Assembly (NCBI RefSeq): GCF_006345805.1
Contig: NC_043004.1
Coordinates: 91,760,001-91,824,000 of the forward strand
From: Octopus sinensis
Lineage: Eukaryota
Length of the DNA: 64,000 bases
Direction of reading: 5' to 3'
In this document: piece by piece, positions 25,503 through 59,811 of the stretch
Position numbering within the stretch: the first letter of the stretch is position 1
Layout of the letters: every line of letters starts with the position of its first letter
Notes under the pieces: model-generated
What the model saw: the letters and a program-made list of their open reading frames with translations, nothing else
Told to the model about the DNA's origin: nothing
Databases searched by the model: none
Program-made: the position numbers and the translations under genes

Positions 25503-25569
25503 ATGATGGTATTAAAATTGAATCAACTTAACTTCATTTTGGTTGTCGTCTTCTCACCCCATATTATAG
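25503..25569 (+). CDS. EGF/F-type lectin membrane protein, coding exon 1 (signal peptide MMVLKLNQLNFILVVVFSPHII-A)
   Basis: Acceptor tttcttctcttacag ends 25489; ATG at 25503; 22 codons + G, then donor GTAAGA at 25570. The hydrophobic N-terminus joins in frame (G+CT=Ala) to exon 38302. Confidence 0.8.
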
Positions 25570-25839
25570 GTAAGACAAATTATACTGAAACCAGTTAATG
25601 TAATTTAACATTAATATATATTAATTTAGTTAATATAAATTCATGTAGAAAACATAATTAATATGTACTAACAAAATAAACAAAATTAACATTAATATAG
25701 TAAAGATTGCACTTCGACCAGACGGTGCCGGATTCAATCCAACTATATGGCACCTTAGACAAGTGTCTTCTACTATCGGACAAGTCTCTTATACTATGAG
25801 ATCCAGTTGTGTTTCCTCAGGTGATATTCAAGTATTCTC

Positions 25840-26050
25840 TCTTTTACTCTTTTACTTGTTTCAGTCATTTGACTGCGGCCATGCTGGAGCACCGCCTTTA
25901 GTCGAGCAAATCGACCCCGGGACTTATTCTTTGTAAGCCCAGTACTTATTCTATCGGTCTCTTTTGCCGAACCGCTAAGTGACAGGGACGTAAACACACC
26001 AGCATCGGTTGTCAAGCAATGCTAGGGGTACAAACACAGACACACAAAAC
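25840..26050 (-). mobile_element. SINE family B 3' half
   Basis: Consensus match. Confidence 0.8.
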
Positions 26051-26085
26051 ACACACACACACACCACACACACACACATATATAT

Positions 26086-26477
26086 ACTAGCAGTATCGCC
26101 CGGCGTTGCTCGGTTTGTAAGGGAAATAATTATAAGCATTTTTAGAGATGTAAAGTATAATAGCCATCTCAATATGGCTAACCACAAAGGGGGCGGGGTG
26201 TTACTGTAGCTTTTTACGTTCTGAGATTTAATAATAAATTTTAGAGAGTTACTTCCCTTATATATGTCAAAAATGGATTAAAAATGGGAAAAATTGATGT
26301 AAATTTTTTTTTAAATCGTAGACTCATCGTAGACGCGCGCTAATACCCAGACGGGCTCGATATGAATCACGACTATAAGATACCCGGTTTTGGTTAAACT
26401 GCACCGCAAAATGTGGGACTAGTTAGGAATCTAAATCGTAGGAGACAGACACACAACCTCACTTTATATATAAAGAT
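26086..26477 (+). mobile_element. Helentron/HINE (DINE-1-like) non-autonomous element, copy 1
   Basis: Starts ACTAGCAGTATCGCCCGGCGTTGCTCGG and ends TTTATATATAAAGAT; ~335 bp nearly identical to copy 2. Confidence 0.6.
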
Positions 26478-26632
26478 TTCCTCTATTACATATATTGAGG
26501 TCTCTTTCTTTCTTTTGTTATCTTACTGTTTTTACCAATATACATATATATATATAAATATATATATAGTTACAGAGATGTACTTGCATAGCAAGTGACT
26601 TGATCTGAGATCGTGTGCTGGAACGAAAACAG

Positions 26633-26891
26633 TTGCAGCGTTGAAGGTGTTTATAAGCCATTTAAGAAACACACAAAAACCGTTAGATTCACTTCAACAT
26701 TTAAATTTAATTTGTCAAAATATTTTCGTCGCTTTGAGACCGCGACCTGTTAGCACGATATTTTTGTCAGTGAACAGGTCGCGGTCTCAAAGCGAGGAAA
26801 ATTTTGGCAAATTAAATTTAAATGTTGAAGTGAATCTAACGGTTTTTTTGTGTGTTTCTTAAATGGCTTACAAACACCTTCCACGCTGCAA
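26633..26891. repeat. inverted repeat, ~119-bp arms, 21-nt spacer
   Basis: 26633-26751 is the reverse complement of 26773-26891; a single arm recurs at 29045-29165. Confidence 0.9.
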
Positions 26892-58330: not shown

Positions 58331-58464
58331 AATTGCTGACCAAAAAATGGAATAATTATTATAGTTGCTGTTTTTTATCTACCTAGCCCGCTCCATTACT
58401 CTTCTCTGATATAAGAAAAAGTGAATTAAAAGAACTTCATTGATGCTGTGAATCATTATCTAGC

Positions 58465-58850
58465 GTGGAGGCGCAATGGCCCAGTGGTTAGGGCAGCGGA
58501 CTCGCGGTCATAGGATCGCGGTTTCGATTCCCAGACCGGGCGTTGTGAGTGTTTATTGAGCGAAAACACCTAAAGCTCCACGCGGCTCCGGCAGAGGATG
58601 GTGGTGATCCCTGCTGTACTCTTTCACCACAACTTTCTCTCACTCTTACTTCCTGTTTCTGTTGTACCTGTATTTCAAAGGGCCGGCCTTGTCACTCTCT
58701 GTGTCACGCTGAATATCCCCGAGAACTACGTTAAGGGTGCACGTGTCTGTGGAGTGCTCAGCCACTTACACGTTAATTTCACGAGCAGGCTGTTCCGTTG
58801 ATCGGATCAACCGGAACCCTCGTCATCGTAACCGACGGAGTGCTTCCACC
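58465..58850 (+). mobile_element. SINE family C, TSD TTATCTAGC
   Basis: TSD at 58456-58464 and 58851-58859. Confidence 0.9.
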
Positions 58851-59289
58851 TTATCTAGCATACGCATTTCAGGCAGTATTAAATTCAAATAAAGATTTAC
58901 GTATAATTTTTTGTCCGTTTATGTTGGTGACTGAGGGCATATCCAAAAGGTCAAAATGCATCTGGCGTTCTCGCTGACCGCTGTTGGAACGAATTTTTAT
59001 CTCCCTCTGATGTATTTTGTTTTTAACTCAGCGAGTCCAAAATAGATGTCATCTCAGGACAAATACTGCATTGATTGGCCTATTGACATTGTGTATGCAT
59101 TTAGTATGATATATAGATTTTAATCGACTATTTTAATTGAAATACTCCCTCAATTGCATATACCGGTTACATACAAATATACATATATATATATATACAT
59201 TAAAATGAGGTAGTTTTGATGAAGCATTGTGAGGTATCGGCCTATATATATATATATATATATATATATATATATTATATATATATATA

Positions 59290-59387
59290 TAATTATAATT
59301 AAGGGTTAATTGCAACAAGTAGCTCAAAACCACATACCGGTATGAGGTTTTGAGCAATTTGTTGCAATTAACCCTTAATTATAATTA
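59290..59387. repeat. spacer-less palindrome, 49-bp arms
   Basis: Centre CATACC|GGTATG at 59338/59339; about 3 mismatches. Confidence 0.85.
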
Positions 59388-59635
59388 TTATAACCCTTAC
59401 CAAATATGGTCTTTTCCATACCGATAAATCTACTAGGTGAAATTTATTAATTTTATTAAATTAATTATATTCCACCCTTTTTGCATATATATATATATAT
59501 ATATATACACATATACATACATACATAATATATATATATATTATATATATATATATATATATATATATATATATATATATATATATGCATGCATATGTGT
59601 GTGTGTATCAATTTTATCTTATTTTTTTCTTTCAG

Positions 59636-59811
59636 TCTCCCCACGAAACGAAACGCCAGAGAAGGTCGCCCCCGTGGAACCTTCCTCCGCCGTCGTCGCT
59701 TTAAGTGTGCTGTTAGTTCTGTCATTATGCGTTATAATTGTATTAGGTATATTACTCATTCAAAAATCTAATTTTGTCAACCGATTTTCCATAACCCGCC
59801 TCCAGTTTTAG
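59636..59811 (+). CDS. coding exon 6, stalk + transmembrane helix + short cytoplasmic tail, TAG stop
   Basis: ttttttctttcag acceptor, phase 1 (G+TC=Val). Reads SPRNETPEKVAPVEPSS-AVVALSVLLVLSLCVIIVLGILLI-QKSNFVNRFSITRLQF*. TAG 59809-59811 is followed directly by GTAAGT. Confidence 0.85.

What the first reader, a model, noticed from the sequence alone, without database searches (positions are those of the whole stretch)
25503..59811. Hidden six-exon gene: EGF - F-type lectin - EGF membrane receptor with only a 16-aa tail
Six exons (67+141+234+198+129+176 = 945 nt, 314 aa) splice in one frame, with every intron phase 1 and GT-AG (seen in sequence). The product is signal peptide, EGF-like, F-type lectin, EGF-like, stalk, TM, then QKSNFVNRFSITRLQF. 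Molluscan EGF/FTP ectodomains are, as I recall, often attached to long tails or tyrosine phosphatase domains (background knowledge). This tail has no Tyr, so no NPxY/ITAM/ITIM. Inference: a glycan-binding surface receptor, co-receptor or decoy, possibly from an expanded cephalopod family. The gene is invisible in the ORF track.
Basis: partly seen in the sequence, partly recalled or inferred. Interest (0 to 1): 0.75.

Follow-up and report, generated by a model that had tools for sequence, protein, structure and literature searches.

The report
Annotated octopus membrane F-type lectin gene
The six-exon gene is real and its predicted domains hold up, but it is already in the public Octopus sinensis annotation, and its short tail is shared with its closest cuttlefish relatives and is common in this mollusc-wide protein family.

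Summary
Six + strand exons (25503-25569, 38302-38442, 46477-46710, 51788-51985, 55224-55352, 59636-59811) add up to 945 nt. All five introns are GT-AG and phase 1, and the product is 314 aa. That product is 100% identical over its full length to NCBI 'uncharacterized protein LOC115214877 isoform X2 [Octopus sinensis]', so the gene is not hidden.

The domain reading is largely right:
- The central domain is an F-type lectin domain by Pfam, PDB sequence search and predicted fold. It keeps the His/Arg/Arg sugar-binding triad, but with non-canonical spacing.
- The flanking modules are SCARF1/MEGF10/Tie-type EGF-like repeats. The second lacks its last disulfide loop.
- One transmembrane helix is followed by the 16-aa tail.

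Relatives number in the thousands, and the named ones are almost all molluscan. The closest relatives are mRNA contigs from Sepia esculenta and another, unidentified species. They have the same architecture and a 15-aa tail under purifying selection.

I found no sign of a cephalopod expansion and no phosphatase exons in the window.

Best reading: a non-catalytic, membrane-anchored fucose-type lectin that needs partners to signal. This is ordinary and low in novelty.

The parts
25490..25502 (+). 5' extension of the first coding exon. It is untranslated in isoform X2 and reads RAEHS in RefSeq isoform X1. It is preceded by a polypyrimidine tract and an AG acceptor at 25488-25489.
   Evidence: Sequence. 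The X1 protein matches 25488-25571 by tblastn. The upstream X1 exon was not found in the window.
25503..25569 (+). Coding exon 1 (67 nt): ATG and predicted signal peptide MMVLKLNQLNFILVVVFSPHII|A. Donor GTAAGA.
   Evidence: Hydropathy peak at residues 9-17. Not tested with SignalP.
38302..38442 (+). Exon 2 (141 nt): EGF-like module 1 with 8 Cys, of the SCARF1/MEGF10/Tie type (residues 24-69).
   Evidence: 368 family HSPs. A profile of family modules that includes this one hits SCARF1 EGF repeats at 6.8e-16 and Tie2 at 5e-12. pLDDT is 93-96. No Pfam EGF model reaches significance.
46477..46710 (+). Exon 3 (234 nt): N-terminal half of the F-type lectin domain. It holds the AVDG calcium motif, His112 (46602-46604), Arg141 (46689-46691) and Asp143 (46695-46697).
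51788..51985 (+). Exon 4 (198 nt): C-terminal half of the F-type lectin domain. It holds Arg151 (51796-51798), the Cys171-Cys186 pair and the closing ICEF motif.
55224..55352 (+). Exon 5 (129 nt): EGF-like module 2, truncated after the sixth Cys (the C7-C8 loop is absent), plus the start of the stalk.
   Evidence: cuttlefish relatives have the complete 8-Cys module. No remnant of the missing loop was found in intron 5.
59636..59811 (+). Exon 6 (176 nt): stalk with an NET sequon, transmembrane helix (residues 275-298, 59689-59760), 16-aa basic tail (59761-59808) and stop TAG (59809-59811).
   Evidence: Kyte-Doolittle maximum of 3.26 over residues 280-298. The AF2 model has a helix at 274-307.

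Best explanation
This is the protein-coding gene LOC115214877 of Octopus sinensis, spread over about 34 kb of transposon-rich sequence.

Shown:
- Its product is a type I single-pass membrane protein. The ectodomain is one F-type lectin domain held between two rigid SCARF1/MEGF10-type EGF-like modules on a short, probably glycosylated stalk.
- The lectin domain keeps the calcium-site residues (AVDG, C-E) and the His112/Arg141/Arg151 triad that binds fucose in solved F-type lectins.
- There is no catalytic or adaptor-docking intracellular domain, only 16 basic residues without Tyr.

Inferred: the protein sits at the cell surface and binds terminal L-fucose-type glycans on other cells, on matrix or on microbes. 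It acts as a recognition or adhesion subunit. Any signal or uptake would have to pass through partner proteins that contact its ectodomain, membrane helix or short tail.

It is the minimal, non-enzymatic member of a mollusc-wide family that also includes multi-EGF short-tailed proteins and receptor tyrosine phosphatases.
For: Gene model:
- Exact identity to RefSeq isoform X2.
- Canonical splice sites and phases.
- Family homology is confined to the exons.
- Colinear alignment with intronless Sepia esculenta mRNA contigs.

F-type lectin domain:
- Pfam PF22633 scores 31.4 bits, above its 27.8 cut-off.
- The six best PDB sequence hits are all F-type lectins: lectinolysin at 3e-8, then FBP32, SP2159 and the eel agglutinin.
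- The AF2 model has mean pLDDT 83, mostly above 90 in the domain. Its top 11 Foldseek hits are all F-type lectin structures, with target-normalised TM-scores of 0.76-0.83 for the ten single-domain entries, ahead of CBM32 and APC10.
- HMMER aligns His112, Arg141, Asp143 and Arg151 with the H/R/D/R of lectinolysin. Across 288 family domains these columns hold H in 192, R in 262, D in 211 and R in 207.

EGF-like modules: profile hits to SCARF1 and Tie2 EGF repeats.

Membrane topology: a single strong hydrophobic segment followed by K300, R306 and R311, modelled as a helix at 274-307.

No intracellular domain:
- In-frame TAG after the tail.
- No phosphatase or other family exons anywhere in the window.
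- Cuttlefish mRNAs stop at the equivalent place and continue into 3'UTR.

Selection, from comparing two relatives (Sepia esculenta and the unidentified source of L001): dN/dS is 0.14 overall, 0.09 in the lectin domain, 0.03 in the membrane helix, 0.08 in the tail and 0.69 in the stalk.
Against: - Sugar binding is inferred, not shown. The motif spacing is H-X28-R-X-D-X7-R, not the canonical H-X24-R-X-D-X4-(R/K) (definition in PMC5712786).
- The vicinal Cys-Cys that packs against fucose in the eel lectin is replaced by Asn-Asp.
- The calcium motif ends in Phe rather than a small polar residue.
- I found no independent octopus transcript. The exact-product look-up returned nothing, and no partial octopus proteins appeared in the protein searches.
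- Octopus and cuttlefish proteins are only 45% identical, and 21-25% in the helix and tail. Orthology and conservation of tail function across coleoids are therefore not established.
- The signal peptide was judged from hydropathy only, and its hydrophobic core is short.
Confidence: 0.6

Rival explanations
1. The lectin fold is kept but sugar binding is lost or changed. On this reading the domain is a protein-protein or non-fucose binding module, and the molecule is an adhesion or scaffold protein rather than a fucose lectin.
For: The motif spacing is non-canonical, with a binding loop three residues longer than the canonical one. The vicinal Cys pair is lost. The review notes that F-type lectin domains deviating from the motif may have other specificities or none. 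An extra Cys98, shared only with the closest relatives (Sepia and L001), may alter the domain.
Against: All three triad residues and the salt-bridging Asp are retained and lie in strongly conserved family columns. The bacterial F-type lectin domains that are the best sequence and fold matches also lack the Cys-Cys and have longer spacing. Their PDB entries are complexes with fucose or Lewis antigens (titles).
Confidence: 0.22
2. It is a decoy or dominant-negative partner of the related receptor tyrosine phosphatases. It would compete for the same glycan ligands, or pair with phosphatase paralogues, without transmitting a signal.
For: Relatives with the same EGF/F-lectin ectodomain carry phosphatase domains, mostly in tandem (Haliotis 'receptor-type tyrosine-protein phosphatase epsilon-like'). 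This protein has no catalytic part.
Against: No cephalopod phosphatase paralogue with this ectodomain was identified here; the named ones are gastropod and bivalve proteins. The helix and tail are strongly constrained between Sepia and the L001 source, which a passive decoy would not need.
Confidence: 0.08
3. The model is truncated. The real transcript would use another donor and continue into downstream exons beyond the window that encode a long tail or phosphatase domains.
For: The stop TAG is immediately followed by a consensus donor GTAAGT at 59812. Introns in this gene reach 12.7 kb, while only 4.2 kb of the window lies downstream.
Against: The TAG lies inside the exon, so use of that donor would not remove it. 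Both RefSeq isoforms end at LQF. Cuttlefish mRNA contigs end the reading frame at the equivalent residue and carry 210-560 nt of 3'UTR. No family or phosphatase similarity lies downstream.
Confidence: 0.04
4. It is a decaying, little-expressed lineage-specific copy on its way to becoming a pseudogene.
For: The second EGF module has lost its last loop. No octopus transcript-derived protein was found in the databases. It has diverged strongly from its closest relatives, at 45% identity.
Against: The reading frame is intact across six exons, with all ten splice sites canonical. The loss in EGF2 removes exactly one disulfide pair and leaves no new unpaired Cys. The triad, calcium-site and structural Cys residues are all retained.
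Confidence: 0.06

Closest known systems
NCBI RefSeq 'uncharacterized protein LOC115214877' isoforms X2 and X1, Octopus sinensis
   Same: X2 is identical over all 314 residues, so it has the same six coding exons.
   Different: Nothing differs in the coding sequence. X1 adds 44 N-terminal residues from an upstream exon outside the window. The record carries no functional name.
Sepia esculenta mRNA-derived proteins (P0161 cluster, 359 aa) and a related 352-aa protein (P0005)
   Same: Same order of signal peptide, EGF, F-lectin, EGF, stalk, membrane helix and 15-aa basic tail. They share the extra Cys98, the long K-(Y/F)-S-Y-R-L binding loop and the R..RL end of the tail.
   Different: Only 43-45% identical. 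They have a complete 8-Cys second EGF module and a stalk about 30 residues longer.
Littorina littorea 'fucolectin-related proteins' (hemocyte transcripts; GenBank AJA37862 and others)
   Same: Molluscan type I membrane proteins that combine F-lectin domains, an EGF-like module of the same type, a membrane helix and a non-catalytic tail. They have been hypothesised to be an immune recognition repertoire (PMC5712786).
   Different: They are longer (565-582 aa), and the Littorina saxatilis cluster representative P0104 has a tail of about 150 aa. Family similarity covers only residues 66-294 of the query. They are highly diversified within one species, whereas I found only two isoforms of this one gene among octopus sequences.
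Molluscan receptor tyrosine phosphatases with F-lectin/EGF ectodomains (e.g. Haliotis rufescens XP_048252782.1)
   Same: Homologous EGF and F-lectin ectodomain modules.
   Different: They carry intracellular regions of 400-700 aa with one or, in six of the seven tested, two Y_phosphatase domains. The octopus protein has 16 residues.
Canonical soluble F-type lectins (eel agglutinin 1K12, striped bass FBP32 3CQO) and bacterial fucose-binding modules (2J1R, lectinolysin 3LEI)
   Same: Same predicted fold, the His/Arg/Arg triad and the calcium-site residues.
   Different: Those are secreted lectins or parts of toxins and enzymes. The octopus domain has longer spacing in the motif and no vicinal disulfide, and it is membrane-anchored between EGF modules.
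MEGF10 / Draper / SCARF1 (the names given to many relatives by automatic annotation)
   Same: The EGF-like modules are of the same sequence type.
   Different: There is no EMI domain, and only one and three-quarters EGF modules instead of many. There is no long tail with NPxY or YxxL motifs, and an F-lectin domain is present that those proteins lack.

Membership tests
F-type lectin domain (FTLD) | F-type beta-jellyroll fold | tested here: met
   In the AF2 model the domain is mostly above pLDDT 90. The top 11 Foldseek PDB hits are all F-type lectin structures, with target-normalised TM-scores of 0.76-0.83 for the ten single-domain entries. This is a predicted structure, not a solved one.
F-type lectin domain (FTLD) | Sequence-family match | tested here: met
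   Pfam PF22633 scores 31.4 bits against a cut-off of 27.8; PF00754 is below its cut-off at 25.6 against 28.2. The six best PDB phmmer hits are all F-type lectins, the best at 3.2e-8. SMART FTP / IPR006585 could not be run.
F-type lectin domain (FTLD) | Fucose-binding motif H-X24-R-X-D-X4-(R/K) | tested here: inconclusive
   His112, Arg141, Asp143 and Arg151 align with the triad of lectinolysin and are conserved in the family. The spacing is X28 and X7, however. Motif definition from PMC5712786.
F-type lectin domain (FTLD) | Calcium motif h-h-D-G-x, where x is small and hydrophilic | tested here: inconclusive
   The sequence is A-V-D-G-F. The hhDG part is met, but the last position is Phe. D94 and G95 are invariant in alignment A3.
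F-type lectin domain (FTLD) | Binds L-fucose or fucosylated glycans | not testable with these tools
   Needs a recombinant ectodomain and glycan array or inhibition assays.
EGF-like domain (SCARF1/MEGF10/Tie type) | Cysteine pattern and profile similarity to solved EGF-like repeats | tested here: met
   Module 1 has 8 Cys in the family pattern. The family profile hits SCARF1 at 6.8e-16 and Tie2 at 5e-12. Module 2 has only the first 6 Cys. Pfam EGF models gave no hit.
Receptor-type protein tyrosine phosphatase | Intracellular PTP catalytic domain(s) | tested here: not met
   The stop comes 16 residues after the membrane helix. No Y_phosphatase similarity was found anywhere in the window, whereas the long-tailed relatives have it.
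MEGF10 / Draper engulfment receptors | N-terminal EMI domain, many EGF repeats, long tail with NPxY/YxxL | tested here: not met
   No EMI hit in Pfam, fewer than two EGF modules, and a 16-aa tail without Tyr.
Type I single-pass membrane protein | N-terminal signal peptide, one membrane helix, basic residues on the C-terminal side | tested here: met
   Hydropathy analysis and the AF2 helix at 274-307. K300, R306 and R311 follow the helix. SignalP and DeepTMHMM were not available. A GPI anchor is unlikely because a charged 16-aa tail follows the hydrophobic segment.

The most novel reading that the evidence does not exclude
The protein could be an obligate ligand-binding subunit of an unknown receptor complex, possibly specific to coleoid cephalopods. 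The lectin ectodomain would capture fucosylated ligands, and the membrane helix and 15-16-aa tail would dock a signalling partner. Those two segments are the most constrained parts of the protein in the Sepia/L001 comparison (dN/dS 0.03 and 0.08). The tail ends in a hydrophobic-x-hydrophobic C-terminus in both octopus (LQF) and cuttlefish (VRL). That would make it a single-copy, conserved counterpart of the hyper-diversified lectin receptors of other molluscs.
Probability: 0.12. Interest if true: 0.5.

Novelty: already known. Interest (0 to 1): 0.18.

Why it matters
The finding has little weight as a discovery. The gene model is already public, and its domains follow from standard profile searches.

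Its modest value is descriptive:
- It gives a functional label, membrane-anchored EGF/F-type-lectin protein, to an 'uncharacterized' octopus locus.
- It links that locus to transcribed relatives in the cuttlefish Sepia esculenta.
- It places the gene in a mollusc-wide family that ranges from short-tailed lectin-like proteins to receptor tyrosine phosphatases.

F-type lectins are not discussed for cephalopods in the two reviews I read or in the papers I could search. If the protein binds fucosylated glycans, it would be one candidate cell-surface recognition molecule for cephalopod immunity or cell adhesion.

Tried and rejected
1. Stop-codon read-through or RNA editing in the cuttlefish relative. 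A 381-aa 'isoform' (P0187) extends the tail, but its contig has a plain TGA at that codon. The gene caller read TGA as Trp, so this is an artefact.
2. Phosphatase or further EGF/lectin exons in the window. tblastn of about 200 family proteins found none.
3. A missed exon carrying the lost C7-C8 loop of EGF module 2, or the longer cuttlefish stalk. No such exon was found in intron 5, and reading through the exon 5 donor gives no Cys loop.
4. The upstream exon of RefSeq isoform X1. It was not found in the window by peptide words or tblastn.
5. Pfam EGF models on the whole protein and on the isolated modules. Only sub-threshold DSL and TILa hits appeared. A family profile against PDB was needed to settle this.
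6. Independent octopus transcript evidence. The exact-product look-up found no record, and no literature mentions LOC115214877.
7. A cephalopod expansion. The closest full-length lectin domains after the Sepia and L001 relatives (46-48% identical) are at most 42% identical. Where those hits carry names they are non-cephalopod, mostly molluscan.
8. A GPI anchor instead of a membrane helix. Rejected because a charged 16-aa tail follows the hydrophobic segment.
9. A conserved C-terminal motif across short-tailed relatives. The C-termini I inspected share nothing, so the hydrophobic-x-hydrophobic end remains speculation.
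Full report
**What is there**

From it and the start coordinate I rebuilt the six exons: 25503-25569, 38302-38442, 46477-46710, 51788-51985, 55224-55352 and 59636-59811. The lengths are 67+141+234+198+129+176 = 945 nt. Each intron begins with GT and ends with AG behind a pyrimidine tract, and each junction is phase 1. The introns are 12.7, 8.0, 5.1, 3.2 and 4.3 kb long. The translation is a 314-aa protein ending ...QKSNFVNRFSITRLQF*.

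**It is a known gene model**

A protein search returned 'uncharacterized protein LOC115214877 isoform X2 [Octopus sinensis]' at 100% identity over 314/314 residues. It also returned isoform X1 (358 aa), which is the same protein with 44 extra N-terminal residues.

X1 reads through 25490-25502, just behind an acceptor at 25488-25489. 'Exon 1' is thus an internal exon in at least one transcript. Its upstream partner is not in the window.

**The exons are real coding sequence**

tblastn of about 200 family proteins against all 64 kb gave 684 matches. All fall in four clusters that coincide with exons 2-5. Intronless mRNA contigs from the cuttlefish Sepia esculenta align colinearly through junctions 1-4. 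The run SRR31864756 is assigned to that species in PMC11917092.

**Domains**

Lectin domain:
- Pfam places residues 91-197 in PF22633 (F5_F8_type_C_2) above its cut-off. The classical discoidin model PF00754 falls just below its own.
- The question was whether this is specifically an F-type lectin or only a generic discoidin-like jellyroll. In a PDB sequence search, the six best matches are all F-type lectin domains: lectinolysin 3e-8, striped bass FBP32, pneumococcal SP2159 and the eel agglutinin.
- An AlphaFold2 model built on a 21-sequence alignment has mean pLDDT 83, and mostly above 90 in the domain.
- The model's top 11 Foldseek hits in the PDB are all F-type lectin structures. Target-normalised TM-scores are 0.76-0.83 for the ten single-domain entries. 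CBM32 modules and APC10 rank below them.
- HMMER aligns His112, Arg141, Asp143 and Arg151 with the fucose-binding His/Arg/Asp/Arg of lectinolysin.
- In 288 F-lectin domains from family representatives, those columns hold H in 192, R in 262, D in 211 and R in 207.
- The spacing is H-X28-R-X-D-X7-R, not the canonical H-X24-R-X-D-X4-(R/K) defined in PMC5712786.
- The vicinal Cys-Cys of many animal F-lectins is Asn-Asp here, and the calcium motif reads AVDGF.
- The bacterial domains that match best also lack the Cys-Cys and have longer spacing, yet were crystallised with fucose and Lewis antigens (titles).
- I therefore rate sugar binding as likely but unproven.

EGF-like modules:
- No Pfam EGF model reaches significance, either on the whole protein or on the isolated modules.
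- A profile built from 33 family modules, including the octopus one, hits the EGF repeats of SCARF1 (6.8e-16) and Tie2 (5e-12).
- Module 1 has the full 8-Cys pattern.
- Module 2 stops after the sixth Cys. The closest relatives (Sepia and L001) have the complete module there.
- The loss removes exactly one disulfide pair.
- I found no leftover of the missing loop in intron 5.

Membrane topology:
- Hydropathy gives one strong segment, residues 275-298, followed by K300, R306 and R311.
- The model makes a helix of 274-307.
- The N-terminus has a short hydrophobic core, FILVVVF, and a plausible IIA|H cleavage site. This was not tested with a dedicated predictor.
- There are five N-glycosylation sequons in the ectodomain.

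**Family and relatives**

An exhaustive HMMER search found 2048 cluster representatives at E<=1e-3 and 447 at E<=1e-10.

The named ones are almost all molluscan: chiton, abalone, limpet, periwinkle, apple snail, oysters and clams. The one exception among those looked up is a hypothetical protein of the green alga Bryopsis, P0006. The names include 'multiple EGF-like domains protein 6/10', 'draper-like', 'fucolectin-related protein' (Littorina littorea) and 'receptor-type tyrosine-protein phosphatase epsilon-like'.

I used a crude hydropathy scan on the 152 best proteins:
- 71 have a membrane helix.
- 21 of these have tails over 300 aa.
- 36 have tails of 31-200 aa.
- 14 have tails of 30 aa or less.

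All seven long-tailed proteins I scanned carry Y_phosphatase domains, six of them in tandem. The short tail, however, is the more common state and not an oddity.

**Closest relatives**

Two clusters of transcript-derived proteins are closest. One is a 359-aa protein seen in many Sepia esculenta-type contigs (17 sequence variants). The other is a 352-aa protein from a species I could not identify. They share several features with the octopus protein:
- the whole architecture;
- an extra Cys at position 98;
- the long K-(Y/F)-S-Y-R-L binding loop;
- a 15-aa tail, AKRTQ(L/I)LKRLPV(V/L)RL.

Between these two relatives, dN/dS is 0.14 overall, 0.09 in the lectin domain, 0.03 in the membrane helix, 0.08 in the tail and 0.69 in the stalk. 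In that comparison the helix and tail are as constrained as the lectin domain.

Octopus against cuttlefish is only 45% identical overall, and 21-25% in the helix and tail. Length and basic character are conserved across coleoids, but detailed tail sequence is not.

I found no other octopus or cephalopod paralogue. After these two clusters, the next full-length lectin domain is at most 42% identical, and the named relatives are non-cephalopod. An 'expanded cephalopod family' is therefore not supported by these data. The databases may still lack cephalopod proteomes.

**Does the transcript continue?**

- The TAG lies inside exon 6, so the consensus donor GTAAGT that follows it (59812) cannot remove it.
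- Both RefSeq isoforms stop there.
- The cuttlefish mRNAs stop at the equivalent residue and run on into 210-560 nt of 3'UTR.
- Nothing downstream in the window resembles the family or a phosphatase.
- A 381-aa cuttlefish 'isoform' that seemed to extend the tail is a gene-caller artefact. The contig has TGA, which was read as Trp.

**Mechanism**

Shown:
- a type I membrane protein with one F-type lectin domain between two EGF-like spacers;
- no intracellular domain.

Inferred:
- It displays a calcium-stabilised, fucose-type binding site at the cell surface and works as a recognition or adhesion subunit.
- Any signalling or uptake needs partners reached through the ectodomain, the helix or the short tail.

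Rivals:
- loss or change of sugar specificity (0.22);
- a decoy for related phosphatases (0.08);
- a decaying copy (0.06);
- a truncated model (0.04).

**Caveats**

- No octopus transcript was available to me.
- No paper in the searchable library mentions the locus or F-type lectins in cephalopods.
- The structure is a prediction from a shallow alignment.
- The tail-length survey uses a simple hydropathy threshold.

**Verdict**

The domain interpretation is largely right, but the gene is already annotated and belongs to a large known kind. Interest is low.

Noticed in passing
window 59809-59817: The stop codon TAG is followed directly by a consensus splice donor (TAG|GTAAGT). This could mark an intron in the 3'UTR. 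It cannot change the protein, because the TAG lies inside the exon.
   Followed up: partly
window 32331-34488 (-), 44226-45608 (+), 24290-24667 (+): Broken reverse-transcriptase reading frames (Pfam RVT_1) from retrotransposon remnants lie in introns 1 and 2 and upstream of the gene. The 44.2-45.6 kb copy is also the most GC-rich part of the window.
   Followed up: partly
window 47232-47705 (-): An ORF with weak similarity to a DDE-type transposase (PF13358, below cut-off) lies in intron 3. It is probably a DNA-transposon remnant.
   Followed up: partly
window 2816-3221, 3787-4010, 4697-4996, 15031-15330, 36545-36844, 52049-52348, 55473-55772, 57327-57626, 57752-58051: An interspersed repeat of about 300-400 nt is present in at least nine copies on both strands at 74-96% identity (families D7/D8, I1-I5). 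One copy starts 64 nt after the exon 4 donor and another 120 nt after the exon 5 donor. ARAGORN found no tRNA-like head.
   Followed up: partly
window 5217-5683, 25837-26077, 27872-28095, 53820-54239, 60698-60938, 61383-61606: A second interspersed repeat family (D10, D12, D15) recurs in both orientations. It gives the recurring pseudo-peptides '[19 protein letters not shown]' and '[18 protein letters not shown]' in the ORF lists.
   Followed up: no
window 30762-30983 and 31337-31558: A 222-nt inverted repeat that is 99% complementary, with 353 nt between the arms, lies in intron 1 (I10). It may be a young foldback or MITE-like element.
   Followed up: no
window 53029-53900, 9169-9850, 38680-38910, 61141-61425: Long AT-rich and (TATG/TACA)-type microsatellite arrays with periods of 8-12 nt. 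They produce the long 'YIYIYI' and 'MYVCMYVC' pseudo-ORFs in the ORF track.
   Followed up: no
window 46560-46562 (Cys98 codon, exon 3): The ectodomain has an odd number of cysteines. Cys98 in the lectin domain has no obvious partner, is conserved in the closest relatives (Sepia and L001), and is Cys in only 34 of 288 family domains. It might form an intermolecular disulfide.
   Followed up: partly
L004 positions 1213-1215 (aligned with the stop codon at L002 1216-1218): A 381-aa 'isoform' in the protein collection comes from a contig whose gene caller read the TGA stop as Trp. The DNA is identical to the normal transcript at that codon.
   Followed up: yes
window 42461-43243 (-): A 260-aa ORF in the very AT-rich part of intron 2 has no Pfam match. 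It contains a Cys-rich stretch and a 'YIGAT...RLNYH' segment, and may be part of a mobile element.
   Followed up: partly
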